From positions 124,001 through 188,000 of IMG/VR virus record IMGVR_UViG_3300044972_002389: 64,000 nt of DNA, one strand, 5' to 3'. Every line of letters starts with the position of its first letter. Position 1 is the stretch's first letter. The notes below the pieces were generated by a model that ran no database searches, was not told where the DNA came from, and saw only the letters and a list, made by a program, of their open reading frames with translations. Position numbers and translations under genes: made by a program. Of this stretch, positions 3,080 to 27,359 are shown piece after piece.

Positions 3080-3277
3080 ATGGGCCCTACACCGTGGAGC
3101 CACTTGCCTTATGAAGTTACCTTGCCCATCAACTCAGTTCACAATCTGTTGAAGATCAGCATCTGGTGCAACAACAACTTTGGTGACCAACCCATCAAAT
3201 GGATGTATATTGGGCAAGGTCGCTGGTTGTTTCCTTCAGAGGAGCAAGCTGCTGAGTTTGCGTTGATTTGGACATGA
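3080..3277 (+). CDS. Trp-rich small protein family member
   Basis: WCNNNFG ... FPSEEQAAEFALIWT. Confidence 0.8.
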   Translation: MGPTPWSHLPYEVTLPINSVHNLLKISIWCNNNFGDQPIKWMYIGQGRWLFPSEEQAAEFALIWT

Positions 3278-6465: not shown

Positions 6466-7677
6466 ATGAGCAAGTTCAGTTGCCCTGTGGTGCGTGTGGC
6501 CGCAGTCGAAGAACATCCGAATGCGGATCGCCTTTCTCTTGTGCGCCTTGAAGGCCTCGGTTATCTCTGCATCGCAAACAAACTAGAGGATGGTAGCCCG
6601 CGCTACAAGCCCGGTGACTGGGTCGTATACATTCCCTCAGCCTCGGTGCTGCCTGAATGGCTGCTCAAGGACATGGGATTTTGGAACGAAGACGCTGGTA
6701 AGGGTGTGCTGGCAGGCAGTGATGGCAACCGTGTGAAGCCACTCAAGCTGCGTGGTATTTTCAGCGAAGGTGTGCTGTATGGGCTCATTGCATATGGTGA
6801 TGACGATTGCCTTTCTGCTGATTTTGGGTCGGCGACGGATGTACATGTAGTAGGCAAAGACAGTCTTGAATATCCAGTCAAGCTAGGCGAGGATGCTGCT
6901 GCAATCTTGGGCATCACCAGGTGGGAGCCGCCCATTCCCGCTGCGATGTCTGGTGAAGTTGCCAGTGTTGCTGAGGCTGCTCTTACCTACGATTTTCAGC
7001 GTTGGGAGAGCGTGCCTGACATCTTCGAACCTGGTGAGGTGGTGGTGGCCCAAGAAAAAATTCATGGATCTTGTACCATCATCCAGTACTTCCCAGGCAT
7101 GGACCATCCCGAGATGTTCCCCGACCATGCAGGCTACCGCAGCATCACTGTCAGCAGCAAGGGACTAGGCGGTCAGGGTTTGGTGTTCAAGAACAACGAA
7201 GCCAACGCCAACAACCTCTATGTGCGGGCACTTGGCACACTGCTAGCCGACCATGACCTCGCCGGGCTCCTCCACAGGATGAGCAAGGTGGACGGCGGTG
7301 CTCATCCGGTGGCTATCCTGGGAGAAGTTTTCGGCAAGGGCGTGCAGGACCTCGACTACGGCACCACTAAGCCCACGTTCCGGGTGTTCGACATGCGGAT
7401 CGGGCGGGAGTGGCTAAGTCCCGATGCCGTGGCCTACTGGGCAAAGGACCTGCCCTGTGTACCTACCCTCTACACTGGCCCCTTTGACCAAACTGCCATT
7501 GAGGCTGTGAGAGACGGTGTCACAACGGTGGGTGGCACCAATGTGCGGGAAGGTGTGGTGGTGCGCAGCCTGGTTCCCACCGAGCATCCCCTGCACGGTA
7601 GGAAAATCTGCAAATTCATCTCTCCGGCGTATCTGCTCCGCCGAGTGAAGAACGGCGAGGCAACGGAGTTCAACTGA
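6466..7677 (+). CDS. RNA ligase, DRB0094/Rnl5 family (N-terminal OB/tRNA-binding-like domain)
   Basis: N-terminal HPNADRL; nucleotidyltransferase motifs EKIHG, GEVFG, FRVFD, REGVVV, KFIS. Confidence 0.9.
   Translation: MSKFSCPVVRVAAVEEHPNADRLSLVRLEGLGYLCIANKLEDGSPRYKPGDWVVYIPSASVLPEWLLKDMGFWNEDAGKGVLAGSDGNRVKPLKLRGIFSEGVLYGLIAYGDDDCLSADFGSATDVHVVGKDSLEYPVKLGEDAAAILGITRWEPPIPAAMSGEVASVAEAALTYDFQRWESVPDIFEPGEVVVAQEKIHGSCTIIQYFPGMDHPEMFPDHAGYRSITVSSKGLGGQGLVFKNNEANANNLYVRALGTLLADHDLAGLLHRMSKVDGGAHPVAILGEVFGKGVQDLDYGTTKPTFRVFDMRIGREWLSPDAVAYWAKDLPCVPTLYTGPFDQTAIEAVRDGVTTVGGTNVREGVVVRSLVPTEHPLHGRKICKFISPAYLLRRVKNGEATEFN
7582..7677 (+). repeat. Copy 1 of a 96-bp diverged direct repeat (RNA ligase 3' end)
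   Basis: Ungapped 79/96 identity to 8086-8181 (hand count). Confidence 0.9.
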
Positions 7678-8193: not shown

Positions 8194-8472
8194 ATGACCG
8201 AAAACTATATTCTCTTGAAATGGGGCACACTCAAGGGCTATCGGGTAGCTGACAACCCTGTGGCGCAAGGTTTGATTAAACAGTACATGGAGTTGGGTGC
8301 CAGCGCCATGCACCAACAGGACACTCCCGAACAAAAACAAATCATATGCGAACTGCTGCCTGCTCTGGCGTGCCCGCGCCGTGCCTTCCCCAACCCATAC
8401 GACCCCACAGGGCTGCTGCACTGGATCGCAACCCAGGAGCCGGTCATTCTCGGACGCGACCCCGCTGGCTAG
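8194..8472 (+). pseudogene. Chimeric ORF: phage gene 5' half (to ...KQIICEL) fused in frame to the 3' end of a high-GC bacterial gene
   Basis: Abrupt GC and codon-style change at about 8355 inside the ORF. Confidence 0.65.
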
Positions 8473-9640
8473 CCGGCTGGCCATTTCAGGATGCCGCCAT
8501 GTCACGCCGCTTTCTCGTTACCGGAGGTGCCGGCTTCGTCGGCAGCCATCTCGTCGCCGCCCTGCTGGACCAAGGCGCGGAGGTGGTGGTGTTCGACAAC
8601 CTGCGCACCGGCCATCGCGAAGCCGTGCTCCCCGGCGCCACGCTGGTCACCGGCGCGCTGGAGGACCCCGATGCGATCGCGTCCGTGCTGGCGCAGGGGC
8701 CGTGGCATGCGGTGTTCCACTTCGCCGCGCTGTCGCTGGTGGGCGATTCCATGCGCGACCCGATCGGCTATCTCTCGGCCAATGTCGGCAACGGCCTGCG
8801 CCTGTTGGAGGCCTGCGTGAAGCACGGCGTGCCCCGCTTCGTGTTCTCCTCCACCGCCGCCCTGTTCGGCACGCCAGACCGCATGCCGATCGACGAGGAA
8901 ACCGCGATCGACCCCGGCTCACCCTACGGCGAAAGCAAATGGATGATGGAGCGCGCGCTGGGCTGGGCCGAACGCATCCACGGCATGCGCTCCGCCTGCC
9001 TGCGCTACTTCAACGCCGCCGGCGCCGACCCGCAGGGCCGCCTGGGCGAGGACCACACGCCGGAAACCCATCTGATCCCGTTGGCCATCGACGCCATGCT
9101 CGGCCGTCGCGCCGAACTCGCCGTGTTTGGCACCGATTACGACACGCCGGACGGCACCTGCATCCGCGACTACATCCATGTCACCGACCTCGCCGCCGCC
9201 CACCTCGCGGCGCTGGAGCGGCTGGACCACGCCAGCGTCACCTACAACCTCGGCACCGCCGCCGGGCATTCGGTGCTGGAGGTGATCCAGAGCGTGGAGC
9301 GCGTCAGCCGCCGCCCGGTGCCGCACCGCTTCGCCCCACGCCGCCCTGGCGACCCCGCCCGCCTTGTTGCCAGCCCGGCGCGGATCATGCGCGAAACCGG
9401 CTGGCAGCCGCGCCTCGCAGCACTGGATGACATCGTCGCCACCGCCCTGGCCTGGCGCGAAGCCCATCCGCGCGGCTACGGCGGATGAGTTACCGCATCC
9501 CGGCGCATCGGCCTGTGCGTGTTCTCAGAAGTGCATTTTTCACCTACTTATGTCCTCATCCGCCCAGCCGCCGCAGCGAGGACCGCCACGCCATGAGCCA
9601 GCCTGCCGCGACCACGGTCGCCAAGAACCTGGGCGCATGA
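8356..9640. other. Foreign high-GC (~70%) bacterial DNA segment
   Basis: Sampled 60-nt lines are about 75% GC against about 50% in the flanks; both ends cut genes; no transposase or terminal repeats seen. Confidence 0.9.
8499..9488 (+). CDS. galE: UDP-glucose 4-epimerase
   Basis: LVTGGAGFVGSH, FHFAALSLVGDS, FSSTAA, YGESK, LRYFNAAGA, GEDHTPETHLIP, DGTCIRDYIHV, YNLG. Confidence 0.97.
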   Translation: MSRRFLVTGGAGFVGSHLVAALLDQGAEVVVFDNLRTGHREAVLPGATLVTGALEDPDAIASVLAQGPWHAVFHFAALSLVGDSMRDPIGYLSANVGNGLRLLEACVKHGVPRFVFSSTAALFGTPDRMPIDEETAIDPGSPYGESKWMMERALGWAERIHGMRSACLRYFNAAGADPQGRLGEDHTPETHLIPLAIDAMLGRRAELAVFGTDYDTPDGTCIRDYIHVTDLAAAHLAALERLDHASVTYNLGTAAGHSVLEVIQSVERVSRRPVPHRFAPRRPGDPARLVASPARIMRETGWQPRLAALDDIVATALAWREAHPRGYGG

Positions 9641-10461: not shown

Positions 10462-11382
10462 ATGTGGAATCAACCTCCGCGTGACTCCAATCCTCGAATC
10501 AACCCTCTACAGGAGACTCCCCGAGTGAACGCTCGATTCATCGCTACCATGGTAGGTGGCGCAATGGCTGCTCTGCTGGCACTCACAGTGATCCTCGGCA
10601 GCTGGTACACAGTTGATGAGCGTCAGCGCGGTGTGCTGCTCCGCAACGGCAAGCTGGTGAGCGTGGTGCAGCCAGGGCTGGGATTCAAAATCCCCTTCAT
10701 CGACAATGTGGTGCTCATGAGCACCGAGACCGTCCTGCTGCGACTGGACAAGGAAGCGGTCTACAGCCGAGACCAGCAACCTGCAACTATCACCTTCTCG
10801 GTGAGCTGGCGTGTGAGCGAAGACAATGTGGACGATGTCTACAAGGAGTTTGGCGGGCTCCGAGGAGTTCAAGACCGTGTGATCCTGCCGGGTGTGCGTG
10901 ACGAGCTCAAGAACGTAATGGGTCGCTACAACGCAGTCACAGCGATTCAGGATCGCACCCGACTGGGCACAGATGTCAAGGCGGCCATTGTGGCCAACAT
11001 CAAAGGGCCGTTTGTGATCGAGAATCTGGCTATTGAAAACATTGATTTCAGTGACGCTTACGAAAAATCCATCGAACAGCGAATGCTCGCGGAGGTGGCT
11101 GTTGAAAGAGATCGACAGGATGCGATCCGAGAGAAGGTGCAGGCTGAAATTGTTGTAACCAAAGCGCAGGCCGAAGCTGATGCAGTCAAGGCACGAGCTG
11201 GAGCTGAAGCTGAAGCTATCCAACTGCGCGGCGAAGCTGAAGCCAAGGCCATCCGGGCCCGAGGCGATGCACTTCGCGCGAACGCAGAGCTAGTCACACT
11301 TACGGCTGCAGAGCGATGGGACGGTAAGCTCCCTACCACTATGGTCCCAGGTGCAGCACTGCCCTTTGTGCATGTGAAGTAA
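10462..11382 (+). CDS. SPFH/band-7/prohibitin domain membrane protein
   Basis: TM helix, then YTVDERQRGVLLRNGK, PGLGFKIPFID, coiled-coil AEAEA repeats, WDGKLP. Confidence 0.92.
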   Translation: MWNQPPRDSNPRINPLQETPRVNARFIATMVGGAMAALLALTVILGSWYTVDERQRGVLLRNGKLVSVVQPGLGFKIPFIDNVVLMSTETVLLRLDKEAVYSRDQQPATITFSVSWRVSEDNVDDVYKEFGGLRGVQDRVILPGVRDELKNVMGRYNAVTAIQDRTRLGTDVKAAIVANIKGPFVIENLAIENIDFSDAYEKSIEQRMLAEVAVERDRQDAIREKVQAEIVVTKAQAEADAVKARAGAEAEAIQLRGEAEAKAIRARGDALRANAELVTLTAAERWDGKLPTTMVPGAALPFVHVK

Positions 11383-11636: not shown

Positions 11637-11974
11637 AATTGGGACAACACCTACACCAACGCCAAATGCTGTTGGATCAAGAGCTGTTGAGAACCACGTT
11701 GTTGGCAGTGCAACGTGAGCGAGAACGTGTGCATGACCAGCACTATGATCTGGAACGCTTTAAAAGCCAGATCATCAGTTGTGTTTTGGAAAATCGGCCC
11801 ATGCTCATGTTTACTCCTGGAAATAACTGGACTGACCCTCAAAATCCTGAACACCCTCCACGTTTTGTGTGCCATCGAGACCACAAGTTATGGCAAGAGT
11901 TCCTAGTTTGGTTGGAAAGTGAACACATGGAAATCCAATACCATGGATGGAATTTCACTGTGATAGCCAAGTGA
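11633..11974 (+). CDS. hypothetical protein
   Basis: GTGA-coupled on both sides. Confidence 0.65.
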   Translation: MKLGQHLHQRQMLLDQELLRTTLLAVQRERERVHDQHYDLERFKSQIISCVLENRPMLMFTPGNNWTDPQNPEHPPRFVCHRDHKLWQEFLVWLESEHMEIQYHGWNFTVIAK

Positions 11975-12255
11975 CAGAAGACAGAGTCTTCCACAATGCG
12001 CTGCTTTTGTTTCCCAAAGATCTTTTCTGCTGCTCTGTTACACTTGGCGAGGAATACTACCGCCAACAATACGAAATCTTGGATTGGCTACGCCAACAAG
12101 GACCTGGTGACACTGGAATTGGTGATCCACCACAAGGTGAGTGCGTTTGGGCATATACACAGCTTTTTGGATACCAGTATATCGCTTTCCCCACTAGGGA
12201 ACTGGTGACGCATTTTCAGCTGGTTTGGCAAAACAACACAGGACATAGTGGTTGA
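11971..12255 (+). CDS. Trp-rich small protein family member
   Basis: WLRQQGP ... FPTRELVTHFQLVW. Confidence 0.7.
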   Translation: MTEDRVFHNALLLFPKDLFCCSVTLGEEYYRQQYEILDWLRQQGPGDTGIGDPPQGECVWAYTQLFGYQYIAFPTRELVTHFQLVWQNNTGHSG

Positions 12256-13030
12256 CACGGATGTGCAGACTCTGTATGTTGTGGGTGTTGCAAAGGAGAC
12301 GGATATGCGAATTGATGTGCCCAGCATCGTAAATGATCCCCAGATGAGAACCTTGCCCTATTGGCTGGAGGTATATCCCAATCAGGATCAAGCTCGCCGG
12401 GCTCGAGCACTGGCTCGCAAGGCGTATGATCGCACACGGCTAGCTGAGGTGCAGCGTTGGCGCTGCTGCTGGTGTCACTGCGAGATGCGTGGCGAACAAG
12501 GCTTCAAGAACAGTGCCACCATTGAGCACATCACTCCTCGCAGTTGTGGTGGCACTGACCACATCACCAACTTGGCTGTGGCGTGTGGCCGATGCAACAA
12601 CCGTCGAGGCAACACGCCCTGGGAAGATTTCCTGCAGGCTATGGAAATGAGTCGGCCCGCGCCTGAGACTGGCAGCTTTCGCTCACTGGCTTTTGAACGT
12701 AAGATGCGCCGAGAGGCTGCTGAGCAGAACAAGCGCATCAAGCAGTTGACTCATTTGGTGCGCAACCACGAGGTGCAAGCCACTGCTACTCAAACGCGAC
12801 GCGAACAGTGCAAGTCACTGGAAGCCCAATACTCAGACATGCTGCCAGGATTGCAGCTGGCTGGTTTCCAACGAGCCAAGAGGATGCGTCGCGAAGTTGA
12901 CCGTCAACTGGCACTGCAAGCCCTCTCACAAAAGGTCAGCAACCCTTTTGAAGTGGACAGTCGGCCCTGGCGCATCTACGAGCGTATGCGTAACAAGCAG
13001 AGTGTTGACACACTGCAAGCAGCCGCTTAA
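12248..13030 (+). CDS. HNH endonuclease-domain protein with a long helical C-terminus
   Basis: CCWC...ATIEHITPRSCGGTDHITNLAVACGRCNNRRG. Confidence 0.85.
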   Translation: MVDTDVQTLYVVGVAKETDMRIDVPSIVNDPQMRTLPYWLEVYPNQDQARRARALARKAYDRTRLAEVQRWRCCWCHCEMRGEQGFKNSATIEHITPRSCGGTDHITNLAVACGRCNNRRGNTPWEDFLQAMEMSRPAPETGSFRSLAFERKMRREAAEQNKRIKQLTHLVRNHEVQATATQTRREQCKSLEAQYSDMLPGLQLAGFQRAKRMRREVDRQLALQALSQKVSNPFEVDSRPWRIYERMRNKQSVDTLQAAA

Positions 13031-14346: not shown

Positions 14347-14374
14347 TTGACAGCCCTGAAAATCGTGCTATACT
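14347..14374 (+). promoter_or_regulatory. sigma70-type early promoter
   Basis: TTGACA-N16-TATACT preceded by TGC. Confidence 0.8.
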
Positions 14375-14402
14375 GCCCACAGTAGCTGGAAAGGCGCTGA
14401 AC

Positions 14403-15620
14403 ATGCACTACACGTTTCCCGAGATCACGCACCTGGATCAAGTGCTGGAAGCTGTCCAGGGTGTGGAAGGCTTCATTGTAGCCCAGCGGCCCTGGGGCAC
14501 TGTGGTCAACTACATTCAGATGGGCCCGGACATGTTCCCCGAGGTCCATACTGCTGGAGGCAGCGCCAGCATGCGCGAGCGGCAGACTCGACTCAAGGCT
14601 ATCCGCCGGGAGTGTAGGGGGCTGCTGTTCAGCCTTGATGGAAAGTTGGTGAGCCGCGCATTTCAGAAGTTTTGGAACGTGGGCGAACGGCGCGAGACTT
14701 TGATTGAAAACATCGATCTCACTCAGCCACACATCATCCTTGAGAAGTTGGATGGAAGTATGATTCGTGCTCTACCTCTAGGTAAGGGCTACTGTCTTGC
14801 AACCAAGATGGGGCCCACTGCTGTAGCAGCACAGGTTGAGCCGTTCGTGGCAACTCGAGACAACTATGACCGATTTATCCGAGACACACTGGAGCAGGGA
14901 TACACTGCCTGTTTCGAGTGGTGTACTCGTCAACAAAAGATTGTGTGTGATTATCCAGTTGATCGACTGGTGCTGACTGCTGTGCGTCACATCAACTCGG
15001 GTGAGTATCTCACCTACTCTCAGATGCAGGAACTGGCGGCCGAGTATGAGCTGGATCTAGTCAAGGCCTATCCTGGTACTGTGGCTAGCATGGAGCAGCT
15101 CGTTCGGGAGACGCATGAGCTGGAAGGCGAGGAGGGGTGGATCATCCGGTGGGATGATGGACATATGGCCAAGTTGAAATCGGCCTGGTATGTGCGTATC
15201 CACCGTGCCAAGGATGCTCTCACGCAGGAGAAGAACCTCATCGACCTCATGCTGGCGGAAAAGCTGGACGACGTCAAGAGCTTTCTGCCTGTGGAGGACC
15301 TGGCTCGCATCGACGCCTACGAGAACGCCTTCTGGACGGGTGTGGGGCAAACTGCCTACATATGGAAGGACCAGTATGTCAAGCTCCGGCGGCAGTTTGG
15401 TGACGATAGAAAGCGGTTTGCACTGGAGGCAGCACCGGGTCTTGAGCCCAACCTGCGTAGTGCTGTGTTCAAGGTCTGGGCCCGTGAGGGCCACGTGGAC
15501 TGGCGTGAGCTGGTGTGCGATGTGATCCGCAAATGCACTGGCACGCAGACCCGGGTGGACGAGGCACGCTCACTGTTCCGTGCGCCGCGGTGGAGCCAGC
15601 AAAGTGTGGGAGACGAATGA
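14403..15620 (+). CDS. T4 Rnl1-like RNA ligase
   Basis: FQKFWN, EKLDGSM, FEW, EGWII, AKLK. Confidence 0.9.
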   Translation: MHYTFPEITHLDQVLEAVQGVEGFIVAQRPWGTVVNYIQMGPDMFPEVHTAGGSASMRERQTRLKAIRRECRGLLFSLDGKLVSRAFQKFWNVGERRETLIENIDLTQPHIILEKLDGSMIRALPLGKGYCLATKMGPTAVAAQVEPFVATRDNYDRFIRDTLEQGYTACFEWCTRQQKIVCDYPVDRLVLTAVRHINSGEYLTYSQMQELAAEYELDLVKAYPGTVASMEQLVRETHELEGEEGWIIRWDDGHMAKLKSAWYVRIHRAKDALTQEKNLIDLMLAEKLDDVKSFLPVEDLARIDAYENAFWTGVGQTAYIWKDQYVKLRRQFGDDRKRFALEAAPGLEPNLRSAVFKVWAREGHVDWRELVCDVIRKCTGTQTRVDEARSLFRAPRWSQQSVGDE

Positions 15621-15811
15621 TGGCCTACAAAGGTGACACGGTGAAGTTTCGAGTGAGCAGTCCCAACGGCACTTGGCGCACAGTCTCCACGCTGGAAGAG
15701 GCTGAGCAAGAGATCAAAACTCTGGTGGACACCTATGGTGTGGCCTGGGCCGCAGTGGATAGGATTGAGACCACAAGGATCCTTGTTCGGCAAGTCAAGG
15801 CTGATGAGTGA
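15617..15811 (+). CDS. hypothetical protein
   Basis: ATGA-coupled to the ligase. Confidence 0.6.
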   Translation: MMAYKGDTVKFRVSSPNGTWRTVSTLEEAEQEIKTLVDTYGVAWAAVDRIETTRILVRQVKADE

Positions 15812-16031
15812 CTCTTACCTTGTAACTTTGGTAGCGCCTATGTGCGATGATTTTGATCAAGTGTGTGATTGGTGCATGCAACAATGGCCGTGTAAGGAGC
15901 GGCGCTGGCATATACACTGGGCTGGATTAACAACTAGAGGCAAGGGGTGGCAAATCACTTGCAGTTTCTGGCACCAAGATGATCTCACCATGTTCCTGCT
16001 CACATGGGCGCACCTGGTTGAATCTAGATAA
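15804..16031 (+). CDS. Trp-rich family member (tandem array unit 1)
   Basis: WCMQQWP ... FWHQDDLTMFLLTWAHLV. Confidence 0.85.
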   Translation: MSDSYLVTLVAPMCDDFDQVCDWCMQQWPCKERRWHIHWAGLTTRGKGWQITCSFWHQDDLTMFLLTWAHLVESR

Positions 16032-16044
16032 ACAGGCGATAGTG

Positions 16045-16284
16045 ATGGCTATACTGCCCTACACAGCCACATTGGTAGCACCCAAACTCCGGGAGCTTGA
16101 CCAAGTTCAGGAATGGTGCCTACAAATGTGGCCTTGTACTCATCGAGCCACATGGTATCAAGATAATATGACAATGCAAGTATTTGCAAGGTTTGAATTC
16201 AAATGCACCTGGAGTTTTCAGTTTCGAGAAGATCTCACCATGTTCCTGCTGACCTGGAGTCATTTGGTGGACAGCCATGAGTGA
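16045..16284 (+). CDS. Trp-rich family member (tandem array unit 2)
   Basis: WCLQMWP ... FQFREDLTMFLLTWSHLV. Confidence 0.85.
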   Translation: MAILPYTATLVAPKLRELDQVQEWCLQMWPCTHRATWYQDNMTMQVFARFEFKCTWSFQFREDLTMFLLTWSHLVDSHE

Positions 16285-16531
16285 TGCATATGTTGTGACA
16301 GTGATGGCTTACTCACTTGAAGAATTTATCCCAGTTTACAACTGGTGCTGCCGCATGTGGGGCGATACAAGCTTGTATCAGACTTGGTGTATGGGTTGGG
16401 CTAATTCAGATCTTTTGCGTGGAGTATATGTTTGCGATTGGGCTTTTCAACACAAGGATGATCTCATCATGTTTTTACTGACTTGGGGTCATTTGGTTGA
16501 CTCTAGCCAAGAGGCAGAAAGTTGTGAATGA
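16277..16531 (+). CDS. Trp-rich family member (tandem array unit 3)
   Basis: WCCRMWG ... FQHKDDLIMFLLTWGHLV. Confidence 0.85.
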   Translation: MSDAYVVTVMAYSLEEFIPVYNWCCRMWGDTSLYQTWCMGWANSDLLRGVYVCDWAFQHKDDLIMFLLTWGHLVDSSQEAESCE

Positions 16532-16800
16532 CAAGTTCAAGATAACATTGAGTGCCCACACAAAGGGAGAACTCGAAGCTGTGAATCTATGGTGCCAACA
16601 GTTGTGGCCAGGTGAGTGCGGGACAGTATGGGACAGCGGATGGCCACTACCTACAACTTTTTTTTAGAGCAGGTGGCATCACTGCGTGGCGTTGCAGTTG
16701 GTGGTTGACACGCAGGGAAGATCATGCTATGTTCCTGTTGACATGGGCACATTTGGTAGAGCCGCCCCAGAATTACACAAGGTATCCTCAAAGTGAATAA
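16524..16800 (+). pseudogene. Trp-rich family member (unit 4) frameshifted at a T8 run (16658-16665)
   Basis: MNDKFKITLSAH...WCQQLWPG...PTTFF*; removing one T joins it to RAGG...LTRREDHAMFLLTWAHLV. Confidence 0.8.
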
Positions 16801-16812
16801 GGACAACAAACG

Positions 16813-17196
16813 ATGACCCCGGCACAGAAAATCAAACAGCGAATCCTTCTCGATCTTGTTAACCAGGGTTCACTCAGCATTGACCCTGCTGCTATCACAT
16901 CAGACAATGTGGACGAGCTTTACGAGGAGCAAGATGCCTGGGACATTGAGTGTGACTTTCGCCAAGGCGAAGTTGAAACTGGTATTCCCTGCGAATATTC
17001 CCGGCACTACGAAAGCCAGAGCGTGGCTGCCCAGATGGCAGATGGTTCCTGGGTAGGCTGGACCTACTGGTATGGTGGCGGCAAGCATGGTGAACCCGAA
17101 TCCATTCCTTGGATGAGCGAGGCCTACGAACTAGACGTCAAGGAAGAGGAGAAGTTGGTGATTGTTCAAACGTTCTCAAAGAAGGGAAAAGAATGA
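16813..17196 (+). CDS. conserved hypothetical phage protein
   Basis: AAGGA RBS; SVAAQMADGSWVGWTYWYGGGKHGEPE. Confidence 0.75.
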   Translation: MTPAQKIKQRILLDLVNQGSLSIDPAAITSDNVDELYEEQDAWDIECDFRQGEVETGIPCEYSRHYESQSVAAQMADGSWVGWTYWYGGGKHGEPESIPWMSEAYELDVKEEEKLVIVQTFSKKGKE

Positions 17197-17405
17197 ACCA
17201 GGATCTCAAAACTCGGCATATAGCACTGGCCTTGGCTCGAGCTGATGATGAATACCGTGGCTTTGAGCCTTTTCCGGAACCTCCCCTGGATGCTGATGCG
17301 GACTGGTATCATGATCACGTGGATGGATGGCCATGGTATAAGCACATGGCAGAAAGGCTGTTGACGCAACCCAACCTCTGTGCTATCCTACAAAACAATA
17401 CATGA
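17193..17405 (+). CDS. hypothetical protein
   Basis: ATGA overlap. Confidence 0.6.
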   Translation: MNQDLKTRHIALALARADDEYRGFEPFPEPPLDADADWYHDHVDGWPWYKHMAERLLTQPNLCAILQNNT

Positions 17406-19374: not shown

Positions 19375-19650
19375 ATGAGCCAAGACTTGGACGACGATTG
19401 GGATTGGGAAGAATTTTTCCGTCAATTTCCCTGTGGTGCGGCTGTGATTTTTGGTAACCATGTGGTGCATGCTGAGGGGTATCCTGAACCAGTCTCGGAC
19501 ATTGACGAAACTGAATTGCGCAAAGAGTTGGCAGAAGATCACGAGCTGGAACTGACCCTTCTCCGAGATTACTCAGTCATACGATTGGAAGGAGATAACT
19601 GGCGCCAGTTGATGCAGCAGTATGCAGGTGCAGATGGCACGCAGAAATAA
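19375..19650 (+). CDS. hypothetical acidic protein
   Basis: ORF in a co-oriented run. Confidence 0.65.
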   Translation: MSQDLDDDWDWEEFFRQFPCGAAVIFGNHVVHAEGYPEPVSDIDETELRKELAEDHELELTLLRDYSVIRLEGDNWRQLMQQYAGADGTQK

Positions 19651-19873
19651 GACGCCACAACGGATCAAACCCCGCCGAGGATGGCACCGCGTGGTGTTGC
19701 CCAATGTACCCAATCCTTGGCGTGAGTTACTGACGGGCATGCCATCAACTGTGTCAAAGATTGACGACTGGCTGGCAGAAAACACCTCTGGCAAATGTGA
19801 GCAGTTTCGCTACAACACATGGGACTTCAAACGCCAAGAAGATGCCCTGTTGTTTACCTTGACGTGGGGATAG
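19634..19873 (+). CDS. Trp-rich family member
   Basis: WLAENTS ... FKRQEDALLFTLTWG. Confidence 0.8.
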   Translation: MARRNKTPQRIKPRRGWHRVVLPNVPNPWRELLTGMPSTVSKIDDWLAENTSGKCEQFRYNTWDFKRQEDALLFTLTWG

Positions 19874-19874
19874 C

Positions 19875-20210
19875 ATGGAAATAAAAATCACCAAACAAAC
19901 TGTCCTTGCCCCTGTGCGTAAGTTGAGCGCAACTTGGACAATGGAAAAACCACAAACATTGAAACACACTGTGAGCGATGAGATCGAGCAACTTATCCAG
20001 GAAGAGATCAACAGTGAAATTTTAGCCGAAATATATCGAGTCCAAGGATGGTATCTTGTACCCCTCACTGCTCACAGCGTCTGGACAAAAGGCGCAGTGA
20101 CGCCATGGCTCTTGGAACATTACCCAGATGGTGGTTACTATCTCTTCACTGGTGGTTGCATGTTCCGGGACAAAGAGATGGCTGTGGAGTTTGAGCTCAC
20201 ATGGACATAA
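19875..20210 (+). CDS. Trp-rich family member with an N-terminal extension
   Basis: RKLSATWT N-terminal module; WLLEHYP ... FRDKEMAVEFELTWT. Confidence 0.75.
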   Translation: MEIKITKQTVLAPVRKLSATWTMEKPQTLKHTVSDEIEQLIQEEINSEILAEIYRVQGWYLVPLTAHSVWTKGAVTPWLLEHYPDGGYYLFTGGCMFRDKEMAVEFELTWT

Positions 20211-20413
20211 TACCCAAGTTCAGTTTCCTGCATCGTGTGGAATATCGGGATCTGCCCGAAGACCCGAGAGTTATGAACTATGGAGAATCTCGCACACAAA
20301 TGATCATATGGTGCTGGAAAAATCTTCCTTTGAGCGATTGGTCGCATGACCCCTTGGGTATTGATTTCAAGCATCAAGAAGGTCTCATGCAGTTTATGTT
20401 AACGTGGACATGA
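20201..20413 (+). CDS. Trp-rich family member
   Basis: WCWKNLP ... FKHQEGLMQFMLTWT. Confidence 0.8.
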   Translation: MDIIPKFSFLHRVEYRDLPEDPRVMNYGESRTQMIIWCWKNLPLSDWSHDPLGIDFKHQEGLMQFMLTWT

Positions 20414-20631
20414 TTGTTACCAAGTGCTTGCCCGGCGGTGGATGGTATGCCGAAGTCATGCTGGACGATAGTGAATGGCCACCAATTGATGAAAATGACC
20501 AATGGTTAGACAGACCCATTCGACGTTGGGTAAGAGAACACACTGAGGGAGCACATTTTTTCAGTTTTAGGGGAACAATACTGTTCAGTAACGAAAGTGA
20601 TCTCACAGCGTTTGTGGTCTCTTGGTCATAA
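20404..20631 (+). CDS. Trp-rich family member
   Basis: WVREHTE ... FSNESDLTAFVVSWS. Confidence 0.75.
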   Translation: MDMIVTKCLPGGGWYAEVMLDDSEWPPIDENDQWLDRPIRRWVREHTEGAHFFSFRGTILFSNESDLTAFVVSWS

Positions 20632-20879
20632 CACGTAGAGTGGCCCGCTTTTTGGAAAAGGAGAAGGATCCTCTCTACCCTTATCCGGTTGTGTTTGACA
20701 ACATGGAAGTCTCTGAGGCTGAAATACTTCGAGCCTGGCTAAGACAGCATGGTGGCCGAGAAAACGAGGATTGGGCTTGGACTCATGGATGGTGGGGAGA
20801 TACCGTTCACTGTTTTAGGTTTCGAGATCCTTGCACAGCAGAGTTTTTCCGCTTGACTTGGCACCCAACAAGCGTATAG
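20622..20879 (+). CDS. Trp-rich family member
   Basis: WLRQHGG ... FRDPCTAEFFRLTW. Confidence 0.75.
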   Translation: MVITRRVARFLEKEKDPLYPYPVVFDNMEVSEAEILRAWLRQHGGRENEDWAWTHGWWGDTVHCFRFRDPCTAEFFRLTWHPTSV

Positions 20880-21040
20880 TTGCAGTATGAAATACGACTC
20901 AGATATATGGTGTTGTGAGATTCTGCTGGCACGCTATCAGCAAGGATGTTTACAACATACCAATCTATCTTCTTGCCCTGATTTTTTGGTGAATTGGGCA
21001 GCACAATCTCAATTGTTTTGTAGGCAGTGGAAAACAAAAA

Positions 21041-21469
21041 ATGAACACCAATAATCCCAAAACTGTTTGGCACGAGGATGGAACCAGCCCAGTTCCTGGC
21101 TCGCGTGTATTTGTTTTTGGCAGCAATCTCGCTGGCATTCACGGTGCCGGAGCGGCCCGGGAGGCTGCCGCTAAATTTGGTGCCCTGTATGGTTGCGGCC
21201 ATGGCTGGCAACCTCTCAATCAAAGCTATGCCATTCCCACCAAGGACCGTCGAATCCACACCCTAGCTTTGGATGAGATCAAACTCTATATTGATGAATT
21301 TGTGCGACTCACACAAAGCCCGTTTGTTATGAATAGTGGTTATTGGGTCACCCGAGTGGGCTGTGGCCTAGCTGGTTACCAAGACCACGACATTGCACCA
21401 TTGTTCCGTGGCGCAGTAAATTGCAGTTTTCCTTTGCCTTGGCGCCAGTATTTGGAGCTTGAGACTTGA
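21041..21469 (+). CDS. A1S_2505-family phage non-structural protein (macro-like fold suspected)
   Basis: VFVFGSNLAGIHGAGAA...SYAIPTKD...VTRVGCGLAGY. Confidence 0.75.
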   Translation: MNTNNPKTVWHEDGTSPVPGSRVFVFGSNLAGIHGAGAAREAAAKFGALYGCGHGWQPLNQSYAIPTKDRRIHTLALDEIKLYIDEFVRLTQSPFVMNSGYWVTRVGCGLAGYQDHDIAPLFRGAVNCSFPLPWRQYLELET

Positions 21470-21774
21470 TTGACATAGCTTTTCCTAATAGCCGCATTGG
21501 GCACTACATGCGGGTCACAAAGAGGTCTGGAAAGTGGGTGATGCAACAAAGCTACATTGCACTGATTCACAAAATCGCCACCACCGAAGACTGCTATTAC
21601 CTTGACTTCTACAAAAGCCGAGATAATGCCACAATGCTGGAGTGGTGCCAAAACGCATGGGGTCCGCCAGAGGTTGGTGAAACATGGTGGCAAAAGCTCA
21701 CTGGGCAAGCTCAACTCACACTTGTGATACGTGGCGAAGAGCGTGTCACGCAATGGCAACTAACCTGGGAGTAA
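21466..21774 (+). CDS. Trp-rich family member
   Basis: WCQNAWG ... IRGEERVTQWQLTWE. Confidence 0.7.
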   Translation: MIDIAFPNSRIGHYMRVTKRSGKWVMQQSYIALIHKIATTEDCYYLDFYKSRDNATMLEWCQNAWGPPEVGETWWQKLTGQAQLTLVIRGEERVTQWQLTWE

Positions 21775-21778
21775 GCCA

Positions 21779-22066
21779 ATGAGCAGTGAATATCAGCATT
21801 TGAAAACTCTTGCATCGGAAATTTTCCGGCTGATGGGCGAGGAGAGTTTCACAGAGATAGACAGCATCTTGAGCAATATGCAGCCTACACTTCAAACAGA
21901 AGTAGAGATGGTGGCACTGCTACGCTACAGTTTTACAGCTCGGCATCATCTCACCTGTTACCATATCTATCTTGACGCAGTAGCACAGGAATTGCTGCGT
22001 CGTGGCAAAGATGTGGAGAGGATTTTGCAGGGACTGCCCTTCTACAGCATCGATAGGTATCCATGA
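21779..22066 (+). CDS. hypothetical protein
   Basis: ORF, ATGA-coupled to the next gene. Confidence 0.65.
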   Translation: MSSEYQHLKTLASEIFRLMGEESFTEIDSILSNMQPTLQTEVEMVALLRYSFTARHHLTCYHIYLDAVAQELLRRGKDVERILQGLPFYSIDRYP

Positions 22067-22329
22067 GTCAGCAGGCTGCGCAGACTAGGGAGGCACATTT
22101 GTTGAATCACCAACCAGTTGACTGGGCAGATGATGTGATGGGGTTTCCCTACGCAGTCGCATGCAAGGTCACAGTGGTGGATTTGTGGCTTCGAACCAAC
22201 TGGTGCAAGCAAAACATTGGCTGCTGGTTGGTAGATTGGACTCACACATATGATAACCACCGGCAGGTGTATTGGTACTGTTTCTCTAGTCAGGAGCAAT
22301 TGACACAGTTTCAACTCACATGGTGTTGA
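22063..22329 (+). CDS. Trp-rich family member
   Basis: WCKQNIG ... FSSQEQLTQFQLTWC. Confidence 0.8.
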   Translation: MSQQAAQTREAHLLNHQPVDWADDVMGFPYAVACKVTVVDLWLRTNWCKQNIGCWLVDWTHTYDNHRQVYWYCFSSQEQLTQFQLTWC

Positions 22330-22354
22330 ACGTTTCACAAGAAGGAAGGAACAG

Positions 22355-22597
22355 GTGATTCGTATGGTTTTGCAGAAAATTTATCAACAAAATCAATGGT
22401 ATGATAGCTTAAGTGGACATTACGTGCACCCCTACAAAGTTCCTGTTGTTTCTCACGCCCCAAGCGGTTGCATTCGCCCGGGACATCTATTGGGTTATAC
22501 TTTTCTCAGGCACTCCTATGTTCCTCTATCTCATGTGGGGCTTATGGCACTGTGGCGCTTTCCGTATGTGATCAAGAACAAGCGTCAGCAACGTTGA
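22355..22597 (+). CDS. hypothetical protein
   Basis: AAGGA RBS, GTG start. Confidence 0.45.
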   Translation: MIRMVLQKIYQQNQWYDSLSGHYVHPYKVPVVSHAPSGCIRPGHLLGYTFLRHSYVPLSHVGLMALWRFPYVIKNKRQQR

Positions 22598-22624
22598 CAC
22601 ACAACAACAATCCGTTACTATAAT
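22594..22624 (+). promoter_or_regulatory. sigma70-type promoter
   Basis: TTGACA-N16-TACTAT overlapping TATAAT. Confidence 0.7.
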
Positions 22625-22643
22625 ATTACAAAAGGAGACTACT

Positions 22644-23015
22644 ATGCGAATTCAGGTGCCATTCAAGCCAGGCTACCGTTTCTGGAGCCCGCGTGTGCTC
22701 CGTCGAAGCGAGCTGGTCACCATCACGCATGAGTGCAAGGAGTATTCTCGGCGAGAAGAAACTCTTGAGATCAGTGCCCGGCACAAGGAGATCACCAGTG
22801 TTGAAATCACACTGAACCAAACTGGTGAGTCCAAGTTTCGCTATTGGGCTGTGACTGTGGGAAAGACAATGGCTATACACACTCTTGTTGATCCCTATTC
22901 GGGATTCAGCAATGAGCAAGATGCAACAGAGTTCGCTCGTCTCTGGCGAGATACACAGAGCACTGAATATTTTGGTAGCCCAATTGGCGAGTGCCATGAT
23001 TACGACCATGAGTGA
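22644..23015 (+). CDS. hypothetical protein
   Basis: AAGGAG RBS. Confidence 0.75.
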   Translation: MRIQVPFKPGYRFWSPRVLRRSELVTITHECKEYSRREETLEISARHKEITSVEITLNQTGESKFRYWAVTVGKTMAIHTLVDPYSGFSNEQDATEFARLWRDTQSTEYFGSPIGECHDYDHE

Positions 23016-23208
23016 CGAAGTCATCAATTATGTGATTGCACGTCCTTGGGATACTCAAGAGCCCAACAATCTCTGCATCTATCACTTGCACAGTGAAGTG
23101 CATCGTGGCACAATAGAGGATGCAATGCTGACCTTGTCTCGTGTGCAACAGAGTAATCCTGGTTTTGAATATGAGGTATATGAGGTGTTTTACAGGAAGT
23201 TAAGTTGA
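23008..23208 (+). CDS. hypothetical protein
   Basis: Coupled ORF. Confidence 0.6.
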   Translation: MSDEVINYVIARPWDTQEPNNLCIYHLHSEVHRGTIEDAMLTLSRVQQSNPGFEYEVYEVFYRKLS

Positions 23209-23483
23209 TGGGTTGGTTTGATAACTGCACAAAGGTTTGTCTATCGGGCCAAATACCCTGTAACTGTGATTTCATGCCGGGTCAGCAGGTGTTTCTCACA
23301 AGCAAGGACAGAGATCGTCATGCTGAAGACTATGCAAGTAGGAAAACCAATTGGAGTGCGCCTTTTGAACCTTGGGTTGTGGAAACATGGCGCAGGTGTA
23401 GTGAAGCAACAGGCGCAGACAAAGTTGCCCAGAAAGTGCGTGACCGTTTGACCAACAGGCCTGTCTTTGCCAAACGACCTTAA
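23205..23483 (+). CDS. hypothetical protein
   Basis: Coupled ORF, Cys cluster. Confidence 0.55.
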   Translation: MMGWFDNCTKVCLSGQIPCNCDFMPGQQVFLTSKDRDRHAEDYASRKTNWSAPFEPWVVETWRRCSEATGADKVAQKVRDRLTNRPVFAKRP

Positions 23484-23763
23484 TACCTGCTGTATTTTTG
23501 AATTTCCTATGGGAGGTGTTACCAGCTGGGTAGTGCGGTTGCCCAACAGCACCAACGGCCACGAACCCCAAGTAGTCAATTGGCTAATTGAGAGATTTGG
23601 CATCGACGATCACGAATATTGGACAAAAATCTTCAACCAGAAGAGAGAGACGCCCAACAGCCTTTGGAAACGAGGCAGCATCTGCACCTATGTGTATCAG
23701 GAATACTGGTTCACCAACAGAGATGATGCATTTGAGACCTATTTGGTGTTCTCAAAAATTTAA
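23467..23763 (+). CDS. Trp-rich family member (divergent)
   Basis: WLIERFG ... FTNRDDAFETYLVF. Confidence 0.6.
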   Translation: MPNDLNTCCIFEFPMGGVTSWVVRLPNSTNGHEPQVVNWLIERFGIDDHEYWTKIFNQKRETPNSLWKRGSICTYVYQEYWFTNRDDAFETYLVFSKI

Positions 23764-26126: not shown

Positions 26127-27359
26127 ATGAAAAAGTTATCCTTACATAGTATAGTAGTTTTGATTGGTCCCACTAAGAGTGGCAAAAGCACATGGGCCCA
26201 AAACCAGTTTGACGCTGATGAAATCATAAGCCTTTCTTCAATCAAGAAAGAGTTGACAGGCAACAATTCAACAGTGGATATTTTGCCAAATATTTGGCAC
26301 GAACTCTATCGTAGAGTTGATATTCGTATCGCCAACGGGCAACGTGCAGTAGTTGATTCCACTAATCTAAAAGACAAGGACAGATTTACTTTTCTTGATA
26401 TTGCCGAAAAGTATGGTGTGGAAGTCTATTACAAACCTTTTGACCTTGAATGGGGCACAATACAGCAAAACTCTGGTTCTTGTTATGACTTTGACTCTTT
26501 GAGAAAAAGCTATAGTATATGGAAAAATGCTCGCACACAGGTGTTACAGGGCGATAATAAACGAGCTGTTGTGCTGTGTGGTGACGAAACCACTGTTGGA
26601 TTTCCAAATGAATTGCAGAGTGCAAGGATTTTAGCAGTAGGCGATGTTCATGGCAATTTTCCAGCTATGCAGCAGGCAGTGCAAATGGCACAACAGTTAC
26701 ACGCAAAGCTAGTGTGGCTGGGAGATATTGTGGACTATGGCGCCAATAATCTCAAATGTTTGAAACTTGCATATGACACTGTTCGAGACGGGCAAGCACT
26801 TATGATTTGGGGAAATCACGAAAGAAAAATTGATCGCTGGATTAGGAGCGACTTGGGTGAAACCTTTAATGGCAAACTTAGCGAGTCAAATCTATCTACT
26901 ATAAGAGAAATCAACAGTTTGAATGACTTGCGGAAAAAGAAGTTTCTTGCAGCTTGGACAGCACTAAGAAACTGGAGTTTTAACCACCTAACAGTGGGAA
27001 AATTTTTGTTTACTCATGGTGCAGCAACACCTGCCATGTGGGCCAACAAGGATCGCAGATTGCAAGGTGTTTGTGCAAATATGGCCTATTTTGGTGAGGT
27101 AGACACTGTTTCACCGACCAAGAATGATGGATATCCAAACCGTATCTGGAATTGGGTTCAAAACATACCTGCTGATCATACTGTTGTTGTAGGGCATGAT
27201 TGGCTTGATCGTGTCAGTTACAACGTTGTGGAAAAAGCAAATTCTTGTGGCGGCCGGGCATTTGTTACAGATTGTGGTAGCAGCAAAGGCGGTCGTTTGG
27301 GTGCACTTTTTGTTGATCAACATAGCAAAGAAGTTTTGCCTTACTATTTTGACACTTAA
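26127..27359 (+). CDS. Polynucleotide kinase-phosphatase (P-loop kinase plus calcineurin-like phosphoesterase; Pnkp-like without a ligase domain)
   Basis: GPTKSGKS, VVDSTN; GDVHG, GDIVDYG, GNHE, THG, VVGH. Confidence 0.85.
   Translation: MKKLSLHSIVVLIGPTKSGKSTWAQNQFDADEIISLSSIKKELTGNNSTVDILPNIWHELYRRVDIRIANGQRAVVDSTNLKDKDRFTFLDIAEKYGVEVYYKPFDLEWGTIQQNSGSCYDFDSLRKSYSIWKNARTQVLQGDNKRAVVLCGDETTVGFPNELQSARILAVGDVHGNFPAMQQAVQMAQQLHAKLVWLGDIVDYGANNLKCLKLAYDTVRDGQALMIWGNHERKIDRWIRSDLGETFNGKLSESNLSTIREINSLNDLRKKKFLAAWTALRNWSFNHLTVGKFLFTHGAATPAMWANKDRRLQGVCANMAYFGEVDTVSPTKNDGYPNRIWNWVQNIPADHTVVVGHDWLDRVSYNVVEKANSCGGRAFVTDCGSSKGGRLGALFVDQHSKEVLPYYFDT

What the first reader, a model, noticed from the sequence alone, without database searches (positions are those of the whole stretch)
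15804..16800. Four-unit tandem array: conserved ~40-bp 3' DNA repeats with hypervariable 5' coding halves
Seen in sequence: four consecutive family genes whose 3' ends (DL-TMFLLTW-HLV) are DNA-level repeats starting at 15981, 16231, 16460 and 16720, spaced 250, 229 and 260 bp. Copies 1 and 2 share an identical 20-mer, GATCTCACCATGTTCCTGCT, while the sequence between repeats barely aligns as DNA. Inference: this repeat-spacer architecture could let homologous recombination at the constant 3' end add, delete or swap variable modules, like a gene accordion or cassette array. No recombinase or reverse transcriptase is visible nearby.
Basis: partly seen in the sequence, partly recalled or inferred. 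Interest (0 to 1): 0.68.

Follow-up and report, generated by a model that had tools for sequence, protein, structure and literature searches.

The report
Recombining tandem small-gene array in phage
Four neighbouring small genes of a large lake-water phage are diverged copies of one uncharacterised family, and related phages show that whole copies are lost or gained, and short patches overwritten, by recombination inside the conserved 3' end; this is unequal crossing-over caught in a phage accessory-gene cluster.

Summary
Four tandem genes (g1 15804-16031, g2 16045-16284, g3 16277-16531, g4 16524-16800) share a 45-66-nt 3' core (63-73% identical) at the stated spacing, and copies 1 and 2 share the 20-mer. 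Three corrections are needed. The 5' parts are homologous along their whole length (25-35% aa identity) and stable between close relatives, so they are not hypervariable. g4 is frameshifted in a T8 run. The four genes are a subfamily of a family with 22 members in this record, which gave 30 matches in a 328-kb contig of the same phage. The family has no Pfam or PHROG match and a predicted ferredoxin/ACT-like fold. Synonymous sites are no more alike in the core than elsewhere, so the DNA repeat reflects conservation of the C-terminal helix. It is not a dedicated DNA element. Recombination in the core is nevertheless real. Syntenic relatives carry 1, 2, 4 or 5 units. A relative with a near-identical array differs by one 247-nt unit whose junction lies inside the core. 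T7 (g4 intact) and T8 alleles both occur in lake metagenomes. There is no reverse transcriptase, but a RecA/UvsX-like gene exists. The proteins' function is unknown.

The parts
15620..15811 (+). Conserved 63-aa gene, the left anchor of the array. Its stop overlaps the g1 start (ATGAGTGA).
   Evidence: ORF. It is present directly upstream of the family gene(s) in all relatives. DNA identity to relatives stops at 15811.
15804..16031 (+). g1, 75 aa (P0001)
   Evidence: profile E 5e-38. An orthologue with an identical 5' part is in L094.
15978..16022 (+). g1 conserved core (DDLTMFLLTWAHLVE)
15981..16000 (+). The 20-mer identical to g2. It is the footprint of a short gene-conversion tract from g2 into g1. 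Positions 15987, 15990, 15992 and 15998 differ from L093 and L094 and match g2.
   Evidence: The clustering and direction have P of about 2e-6.
16045..16284 (+). g2, 79 aa (P0005). It is the orthologue of the single 'A-type' gene of distant relatives.
   Evidence: (71-76% DNA identity to the relatives' single gene).
16228..16272 (+). g2 conserved core. It is chimeric relative to L094: bases 1-40 equal the L094 unit-2 core, and from 16262-16268 (ATTTGGT) onward the sequence equals L094 unit 2'. This is the junction of the 247-nt unit difference.
   Evidence: (0 differences on both sides of the junction).
16277..16531 (+). g3, 84 aa (P0002). Its start overlaps the g2 stop (ATGAGTGA).
   Evidence: The orthologue in L094 has 2 substitutions.
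16457..16501 (+). g3 conserved core
16524..16800 (+). g4, with a GTG start, broken by a frameshift. The first frame runs 16524-16667 (P0006) and the +1 frame runs 16666-16800 (P0004). It is a single intact ORF in L094 and in contigs of runs X12 and X23.
   Evidence: (table 4).
16658..16665 (+). T8 homopolymer that breaks g4. T7 gives the intact gene, and both alleles occur in lake metagenomes.
   Evidence: T8 is identical in four IMG/VR contigs. T7 is found in L094 and in X12 and X23 contigs, while X9 and X17 keep T8.
16717..16761 (+). g4 conserved core
16813..17196 (+). Conserved 127-aa gene, the right anchor of the array
   Evidence: about 91% DNA identity to relatives, running from within the g4 core onward.
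14403..15620 (+). T4 Rnl1-type RNA ligase, at the head of the same gene string. A promoter-like site lies at 14347-14374.
   Evidence: (PF09511, 6.7e-26).

Best explanation
The locus is a tandem array of four old, diverged paralogues. The fourth is frameshifted in this strain. They belong to a large phage-specific family of small proteins (about 70-110 aa) with a predicted beta-alpha-beta-beta-alpha, ferredoxin/ACT-like fold.

The '3' DNA repeat' encodes strand beta3 and the C-terminal helix (W-x-F-x3-[ED]D-L-x-M-F-L-L-T-W-x-H-L-V). This is the most conserved structural element of the whole family, and its DNA similarity is a by-product of that protein constraint.

Because the four cores lie in direct orientation 230-260 bp apart, they act as patches of partial homology. 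The phage's general homologous-recombination system (a RecA/UvsX-like gene is present) makes unequal crossovers and short conversion tracts there. These events remove or add whole units, re-associate 5' modules with different tails, and partly homogenise neighbouring cores.

Shown here: the family, the fold prediction, copy numbers of 1, 2, 4 and 5 in syntenic relatives, a unit-sized indel with its junction in the core, reciprocal micro-conversions, the T7/T8 polymorphism, and the absence of a reverse transcriptase.

Inferred: the proteins are accessory, probably early-expressed host-interaction factors whose variable alpha1/beta2-loop surface gives specificity. Also inferred is that the turnover of units reflects changing selection from hosts.
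For: Family: an iterated profile search of the 133.7-kb record converges on 22 genes, all on one strand (alignment A2). The same profile gave 30 matches in the 328.6-kb contig of the same phage.

Fold: the AF2 model has pLDDT 84 and elements E6-12, H15-28, E37-45, E51-58, H61-70. The best solved match is an ACT domain, Z 8.0.

Protein constraint explains the repeat: same-codon use among g1-g4 is 31/64 in the core (23.6 expected from codon usage) and 31/67 in the 5' part (25.2 expected).

Copy number at the syntenic slot:
- One unit: L007, L009, L011, L017, L103 (L003 carries one A-type gene in a different gene neighbourhood).
- Two units: L005, L012.
- Four units: the window and L013-L016.
- Five units: L094.

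Recent events: window and L094 differ in the whole array by only 7 substitutions, one 247-nt unit and one T. The left flank differs by 7.6-14.7%. The unit junction lies within ATTTGGT at 16262-16268.

Conversion: 4 of the 7 substitutions cluster at 15987-15998 and all take the g2 state. L093 shows 4 clustered changes at 16251-16259 that take the g1 state. In relatives, the L012_b core is identical to L012_a over 42 nt, while L005_b, whose 5' part is 159/159 identical to L012_b, differs at 6 of 45 core positions.

Discordant histories of the 5' part and the core appear. A variant unit order is seen in X9 and X23 contigs. The recombinase is, and one search shows no reverse transcriptase.
Against: Apart from the g1/g2 20-mer, exact identity between the cores is only 8-10 nt, which is poor substrate for efficient homologous recombination. 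Events are therefore probably rare or microhomology-driven. T4 is reported to recombine at 6-10-bp microhomologies (PMC9391042).

Only assembled contigs were available, so there is no direct evidence of copy-number heterogeneity within one population, nor of excised circles.

The direction of the 247-nt event (deletion here or acquisition in L094) is inferred by parsimony.

The function of the proteins is untested. Pfam and PHROGs give nothing and the fold match is generic.

Average omega of the 5' part is below 1 (0.26-0.68), so positive selection is not demonstrated.
Confidence: 0.72

Rival explanations
1. This is an old tandem duplication kept by simple purifying selection. The conserved 3' end is only a conserved helix, and recombination plays no part.
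For: Units are only 41-45% identical as protein. Synonymous sites in the core are as diverged as elsewhere. Each unit is stable between the window and L094.
Against: Copy number differs (1, 2, 4, 5) in syntenic relatives. The unit-sized indel has its junction in the core. Clustered substitutions, each taking the state of the neighbouring unit, lie in the cores. The 5' part and the core give discordant distances.
Confidence: 0.1
2. The apparent unit indel, conversions and order variants are artefacts of metagenome assembly, either chimeras between co-occurring strains or collapse at repeats.
For: L093, L094 and the X9/X23 variants are short metagenomic contigs. The variant contig in X9 is of low depth, 5 against 63-81 for the main form.
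Against: Exact repeats between cores are at most 20 nt, which is shorter than usual assembly k-mers (established practice, not tested here). The window's form is reproduced base for base in four IMG/VR contigs and in a single 1185-nt Logan contig spanning 15635-16819 (record 9). The extra L094 unit has a unique 5' part (P0013) that cannot arise by collapse. Conversion tracts of 9-12 nt inside otherwise identical sequence are not an assembly signature.
Confidence: 0.07
3. The conserved core is a functional nucleic-acid element in its own right: a recombination site for a dedicated enzyme, an attC-, PeSL- or CRISPR-like repeat, or an RNA signal. The array would then be a true cassette system.
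For: The repeat-spacer look with regular spacing of about 230-260 nt. An HNH endonuclease gene lies 3 kb upstream at 12248-13030.
Against: There is no excess conservation at synonymous sites. No inverted repeat or stem-loop, and no promoter-terminator pair, lies between units, and the genes overlap or are 12-13 nt apart. No reverse transcriptase is present. No integrase was seen near the array, although the whole genome was not scanned for one. The same core is conserved in family members scattered over the genome as the end of the protein.
Confidence: 0.05
4. Targeted hypermutation of the 5' halves (DGR-like or similar) makes them variable while sparing the 3' end.
For: The 5' parts of A-type orthologues diverge 6-10 times faster in dN than the flanking genes.
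Against: There is no reverse transcriptase in 328 kb and no template repeat. dS is raised as well as dN. The 5' parts are 0-2 substitutions apart between window and L094, while the neighbouring 63-aa gene is 7.6% apart. This fits exchange of old alleles and not ongoing mutagenesis.
Confidence: 0.02

Closest known systems
Modular shuffling at PeSL cassettes in hyperplastic regions of T4-type phages (Arbiol et al. 2010, PMC2839356; Comeau et al. 2014, PMC4122927)
   Same: Short conserved repeats are interspersed among small non-essential ORFs of a large phage with a T4-like gene set (Rnl1, a Gp23-like stretch, a UvsX/RecA-like gene). Recombination between the repeats inserts, deletes and replaces genes between close relatives.
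   Different: PeSLs are intergenic promoter plus stem-loop terminator cassettes flanking unrelated ORFans. Here the repeat is the coding 3' end of paralogous genes, there are no intergenic regulatory motifs, and the modules are homologous to each other. Mini-circles were not testable.
Recombination-driven segmental amplification ('genomic accordion') in viruses: T4 dmd-tifA amplification against toxIN (Srikant et al. 2022, PMC9391042); poxvirus K3L (from my own knowledge, Elde et al. 2012)
   Same: Tandem copy-number change of a small accessory gene through recombination at short homologies. In T4 the junctions are 6-10-bp microhomologies. Here the junction is 7 nt of identity inside a core that is 37/45 identical.
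   Different: Accordions make identical fresh copies that expand and collapse within a few passages. Here the units are ancient paralogues (25-45% aa identity), and the changes seen are loss or gain of single diverged units plus micro-conversion. No selective agent is known.
Unequal crossing-over and gene conversion in tandem multigene families (general genetics, from my own knowledge)
   Same: Direct-repeat paralogues, indel junctions inside the best-conserved segment, and short conversion tracts that locally homogenise neighbours.
   Different: There is no difference in principle. The case is notable only for its setting: a phage, units of 230-260 bp, and overlapping stop and start codons.
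ACT / ferredoxin-like beta-alpha-beta-beta-alpha(-beta) domains (e.g. TyrA ACT domain, 5v0s)
   Same: The predicted topology and size match: Z 8.0, rmsd 2.5 A over 65 residues.
   Different: There is no sequence relationship (12% identity) and no Pfam hit. The tool notes that Z of about 8 is typical of chance-level common folds. No ligand-binding motif was identified.

Membership tests
Tandem paralogue array evolving by unequal homologous recombination / gene conversion | Head-to-tail homologous units | tested here: met
   Four units on one strand with spacing 250, 229 and 260 nt. Profile E 1e-38 to 1e-41 for intact units.
Tandem paralogue array evolving by unequal homologous recombination / gene conversion | Copy number differs between related genomes at the same locus | tested here: met
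   1, 2, 4 and 5 units between the 63-aa gene and the 127-aa gene.
Tandem paralogue array evolving by unequal homologous recombination / gene conversion | Indel junctions fall inside the shared homologous segment | tested here: met
   The window g2 core equals L094 unit 2 for bases 1-40 and L094 unit 2' from ATTTGGT onward. There are 0 mismatches on either side. Only one event was resolved at base level.
Tandem paralogue array evolving by unequal homologous recombination / gene conversion | Conversion tracts between paralogues | tested here: met
   15987-15998 (g2 into g1, window). 16251-16259 (g1 into g2, L093). L012_b core equals L012_a over 42 nt.
Classical genomic accordion (poxvirus K3L, T4 tifA) | Near-identical, recently amplified copies | tested here: not met
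   Units share 41-45% aa identity. The 5' parts share 42-48% nt identity.
Classical genomic accordion (poxvirus K3L, T4 tifA) | Copy-number heterogeneity within one population or under selection | tested here: inconclusive
   Only Logan contigs were available. They show co-occurring variant forms in X9 and X23 but cannot show rare variants.
PeSL cassette shuffling (T4-type hyperplastic regions) | Intergenic early promoter plus stem-loop terminator motif as the repeat | tested here: not met
   Units overlap or are separated by 12-13 nt. No terminator-like site lies within 15600-17200, and the promoter-like hits lie inside coding sequence.
Diversity-generating retroelement | Reverse transcriptase and a template/variable repeat pair | tested here: not met
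   PF00078 has no match in the 328.6-kb contig. That contig is 77% complete by CheckV, so absence is not absolute. No near-identical template copy was found.
CRISPR-like or integron-like repeat-spacer array | Near-identical non-coding repeats or attC sites with a cognate enzyme | tested here: not met
   The repeats are coding and 63-73% identical. TRF finds no array. No palindromic sites were found.
ACT / ferredoxin-like fold | beta-alpha-beta-beta-alpha-beta sandwich | tested here: inconclusive
   The model has beta-alpha-beta-beta-alpha with pLDDT 84. Best Z is 8.0 to 5v0s_B and Foldseek gives no hit with E<1e-3. This is fold-level resemblance only.
Any curated protein family (Pfam-A, PHROGs v4) | Profile match above threshold | tested here: not met
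   No family matches g1-g4. Across all 23 rows, only one member hits Gp23/phrog_138, through an unrelated N-terminal stretch.

The most novel reading that the evidence does not exclude
The conserved helix-coding core doubles as a selected 'linker' that lets a very large phage (over 328 kb) keep and reshuffle a library of about 30 small host-interaction modules. Units would be exchanged, reordered and dropped between co-infecting relatives at the core and at the ATGAGTGA stop-start junction. Individual units would be switched off and on by homopolymer slippage (T7/T8 in g4, where a UUU-UAG context could also allow +1 read-through). That would amount to a phage counterpart of contingency-locus and cassette systems.
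Probability: 0.15. Interest if true: 0.7.

Novelty: new variant of a known kind. Interest (0 to 1): 0.5.

Why it matters
Large phages carry many small ORFan genes whose turnover is seen but rarely resolved to the base. This locus gives a clean natural example. Two arrays differ by 0.7% in sequence yet by one whole unit, one conversion tract and one homopolymer slip. This shows that the conserved end of a gene family can itself be the recombination substrate that changes gene number. It also defines an uncharacterised family of small proteins that is highly expanded in a lake-water phage of more than 328 kb (22 genes in 134 kb). That expansion is the kind of signature expected of host-interaction or counter-defence factors, so the family is a reasonable target for functional screens.

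Tried and rejected
- Tandem Repeats Finder found no array.
- blastn of 14400-17200 against 50,697 phage records gave only an unrelated 56-nt hit.
- tblastn of the RNA ligase found nothing closer than 38% identity, so no close sequenced relative is available.
- Pfam and PHROGs scans of g1-g4 and of all 23 family rows matched no family.
- Foldseek against PDB and BFVD gave nothing at E<1e-3. VIA-align and the ESM Atlas gave only generic ferredoxin/ACT-like folds and unnamed viral clusters.
- The IMG/VR search anchored on the 127-aa neighbour returned 80 loci, but 75 are unrelated phages that share only that gene and lack the family.
- Family-anchored scans of IMG/VR and JGI metagenomes added only one new locus, L103.
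- The contig of P0017 (a B-type unit with a middle-type tail, possibly an array of three or more units) could not be fetched.
- DGR was rejected.
- PeSL, integron and CRISPR-like readings were rejected.
- A DNA- or RNA-level function of the core was rejected on synonymous-site evidence.
- Blanket positive selection on the 5' part is not shown, because omega is below 1.
- The tree of 5' parts does not resolve the order of duplications; 9 of 14 inner branches are open.
- g4 was read through with X/NNN at the break for alignments. For the tree only, the X was dropped and no residue was put at the break.

Full report
**1. What is in the sequence**

Window 15804-16800 holds four consecutive + strand genes:
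- g1, 15804-16031 (75 aa).
- g2, 16045-16284 (79 aa).
- g3, 16277-16531 (84 aa).
- g4, from GTG 16524 to 16800.

The array sits behind a T4 Rnl1-type RNA ligase (14403-15620) and a 63-aa gene (15620-15811), and in front of a 127-aa gene (16813-17196). Units are packed tightly. The stop of the 63-aa gene and the stop of g2 both overlap the next start in the same word, ATGAGTGA. Elsewhere the gaps are 12-13 nt.

The repeat finder gives one family of four 66-nt direct repeats at 15956, 16206, 16435 and 16695, with spacing 250, 229 and 260 nt and 65-73% identity. All other pairs of cores share only 8-10 exact bases. Tandem Repeats Finder sees nothing.

g4 is not intact. The frame stops at 16665-16667 directly after a T8 run (16658-16665) and resumes in the +1 frame.

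**2. The four genes are a subfamily of a large family**

A profile of the four was iterated against all six-frame ORFs of the 133,672-bp record in which the window lies. It converged on 22 genes, all on the same strand. They lie in clusters at window 1439-3274, 11947-12252, 15804-16800 and 19622-23760, and at two places outside the window (alignment A2).

Nearly all members end with W-x-F-x3-eD-x3-F-x-L-T-W followed within 0-2 residues by the stop. The four genes of the finding add a tail, x-H-L-V-[ED]-S....

The record is a fragment. Identical sequence lies in IMG/VR contigs of 141-329 kb. The 328,603-bp contig is rated 77% complete and gave 30 matches to the family profile. Twenty-four lake-water metagenome runs hold the locus.

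Pfam-A and PHROGs have no family for these proteins. All 36 database homologues are unnamed metagenomic orthologues of members of this phage clade.

An AlphaFold2 model of g2 built with the paralogue alignment has pLDDT 84 and the order beta1-alpha1-beta2-beta3-alpha2. Structure searches give only generic ferredoxin/ACT-like matches. The best is Z 8.0, and no Foldseek hit is below E 1e-3. The nearest ESM-Atlas clusters are unnamed viral proteins. The function is therefore unknown.

**3. Why the 3' end looks like a DNA repeat**

The repeat encodes beta3 and the C-terminal helix, the best-conserved part of the whole family. I compared codon use at positions where two copies have the same degenerate amino acid.
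- In the core, 31 of 64 codons are the same, against 23.6 expected from codon usage.
- In the 5' part, 31 of 67 are the same, against 25.2 expected.

So there is no extra conservation at the DNA level. The repeat is a by-product of protein constraint, which also argues against a DNA or RNA signal in the core.

The 5' parts are homologous too (13-18 identical residues of about 52), so they are diverged and not unalignable.

**4. Relatives: unit number, order and junctions**

Contigs with the same synteny (Rnl1, 63/64-aa gene, family gene(s), 126/127-aa gene) carry different numbers of units:

| Units | Contigs |
|---|---|
| 1 | L007/L008, L009/L010, L011, L017, L103 (L003/L004 carry one A-type gene but in a different gene neighbourhood) |
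| 2 | L005/L006, L012 |
| 4 | the window and four IMG/VR contigs identical over 8.4 kb, T8 included |
| 5 | L094 |

The single gene of distant relatives is the orthologue of g2 ('A-type'). Its core is 42/45 identical to the g2 core, but its 5' part is only 61-70% identical.

The second unit of L005 and L012 is a further type, 'B'. g1, g3 and g4 have orthologues only in L093 and L094.

Contigs of runs X9 and X23 show a co-occurring form. In it the 63-aa gene joins directly to an A-type unit, which is then followed by a g1-like unit. That is a different order from the window (tables 5 and 8).

**5. Base-level evidence for recombination in the core**

L094 is the most informative relative. Its RNA-ligase end differs from the window by 14.7% and its 63-aa gene by 7.6%. 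The whole array (15804-16761) differs by only 7 substitutions, one T, and one extra 247-nt unit.

*The unit indel.* The window's g2 equals L094 unit 2 up to base 40 of the core, and equals L094 unit 2' from ATTTGGT (16262-16268) onward. There are no mismatches on either side. Unit 2' has its own 5' part (P0013, 60% identical to g2). The simplest reading is therefore a unit deletion in the window's lineage by unequal crossover between two cores. An insertion in L094 would need a donor and two crossovers, and it too would place the junction in the core.

*Conversion in the window.* Four of the 7 substitutions lie at 15987, 15990, 15992 and 15998 in the g1 core. All four turn the L093/L094 state (DLALFLL) into the g2 state (DLTMFLL). 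The chance of such clustering and direction is about 2e-6.

*Conversion in L093.* L093 is 96.4% identical to the window. It shows the reverse: four changes at 16251-16259 that give the g2 core the g1 state.

*Conversion in the two-unit relatives.* L012_b and L005_b have identical 5' parts (159/159). Their cores differ at 6 of 45 positions. The L012_b core matches the neighbouring L012_a core over 42 nt, and the two carry different tails.

*Discordant distances.* The 5' part and the core give discordant distances. For L005a-L009, dS is 0.25 against 0.97. For window-L007, dS is 0.98 against 0.09.

*Tails.* The two tail types, SSPSMQKES and EPPQNYTRYPQSE, look from their DNA strings like the same sequence read in two frames after an indel. 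I did not align them formally.

**6. The T run**

T8, which breaks g4, is found in the record, in four IMG/VR contigs, and in contigs of X9 and X17. T7, which gives intact g4, is found in L094 and in contigs of X12 and X23. Those X12 and X23 contigs otherwise differ from the window at only 2-3 positions.

This is a real polymorphism between near-identical strains. Whether T8 is a null allele is open. The context ACU-UUU-UUU-UAG-A would give the T7 protein after a +1 shift on UUU at the stop codon, or after loss of one U during transcription. That is inference only.

**7. Machinery**

No reverse transcriptase is found in the 328-kb contig. One RecA/UvsX-like ORF is present there. An HNH endonuclease gene lies 3 kb upstream of the array. 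No promoter-terminator cassettes or stem-loops separate the units.

**8. Interpretation**

Four qualifications apply:
- The repeat is a conserved protein segment and not a dedicated element.
- The units are old paralogues, not fresh amplicons or hypermutated cassettes.
- Events are probably rare and driven by microhomology.
- Heterogeneity within one population could not be tested, because only contigs were available.

The closest described systems are PeSL-mediated shuffling in T4-type hyperplastic regions (PMC2839356, PMC4122927) and recombination-driven amplification of tifA in T4 at 6-10-bp microhomologies (PMC9391042). This locus differs from both. The repeat is coding, and the modules are homologous but anciently diverged.

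I rate it a new variant of a known kind: ordinary unequal crossing-over and gene conversion, well documented here in a new and highly expanded phage gene family of unknown function.

Noticed in passing
whole record; window 1439-3274, 11947-12252, 19622-23760; L001:1645-2560 (-); L002:3297-6293 (-): The four genes belong to a family of 22 small genes in the 133.7-kb record, and the family profile gave 30 matches in a 328.6-kb contig of the same phage. All lie on one strand, and nearly all end with F-x-L-T-W just before the stop. No Pfam or PHROG family covers them.
   Followed up: yes
G000 versus IMG/VR contigs behind L013-L016: The record holding the window (133,672 bp) is a fragment. Identical sequence lies in contigs of 141, 223, 310 and 329 kb. 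The largest is rated 77% complete by CheckV, so this is a very large phage (over 328 kb) from lake water.
   Followed up: partly
window 16658-16665: T7/T8 length polymorphism switches g4 between intact and frameshifted in near-identical strains from different runs. The UUU-UUU-UAG context could allow +1 read-through or transcriptional slippage.
   Followed up: partly
window 19875-20207 (+): One family member (111 aa) carries an N-terminal stretch matching the T4 major capsid protein family (PF07068 Gp23, E 1.3e-6; phrog_138, 4e-7) fused to the family's C-terminal motif. The same weak Gp23 flag appears on its 111-aa orthologues in L003 and L005.
   Followed up: no
window 6466-7677, 14403-15620, 26127-27359 (+): A full RNA-repair gene set is present: an Rnl2-type ligase (PF09414), an Rnl1-type ligase (PF09511 plus the T4_Rnl1_C domain), and a kinase-phosphoesterase protein (AAA_33 plus Metallophos). 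In T4 such a set counters host anticodon nucleases.
   Followed up: no
window 32939-44992 (-) and 44989-48369 (-): There is a 4017-aa ORF followed by a 1126-aa ORF on the minus strand. A 603-aa ORF at 30379-32190 has an endosialidase-chaperone domain (PF13884), which suggests giant fibre or adhesin genes.
   Followed up: no
window 16813-17196 (+): The 127-aa gene right of the array is widespread. The IMG/VR scan found 100 stretches that encode a relative; the 75 kept loci outside this clade are 46-62% identical and lack the small-protein family.
   Followed up: partly
L009:5115-5810, L103:1558-2307: Some relatives carry an extra 231-aa gene inserted between the RNA ligase and the 63-aa gene. 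L012 and the contig of P0017 carry an extra 106-aa gene in front of the A-type unit. The neighbourhood is generally plastic.
   Followed up: no
window 15500-15811 versus L094 and L093: Divergence is sharply mosaic. Between window and L094 the Rnl1 3' end differs by 14.7% and the 63-aa gene by 7.6%, but the array by 0.7% and the 127-aa gene by 1.3%. This implies a recent exchange of the array region between lineages.
   Followed up: partly
window 8346-9488, 10462-11382, 12248-13030 (+): Accessory genes lie upstream of the array: an NAD-dependent epimerase/dehydratase, an SPFH/Band 7 protein and an HNH endonuclease.
   Followed up: no
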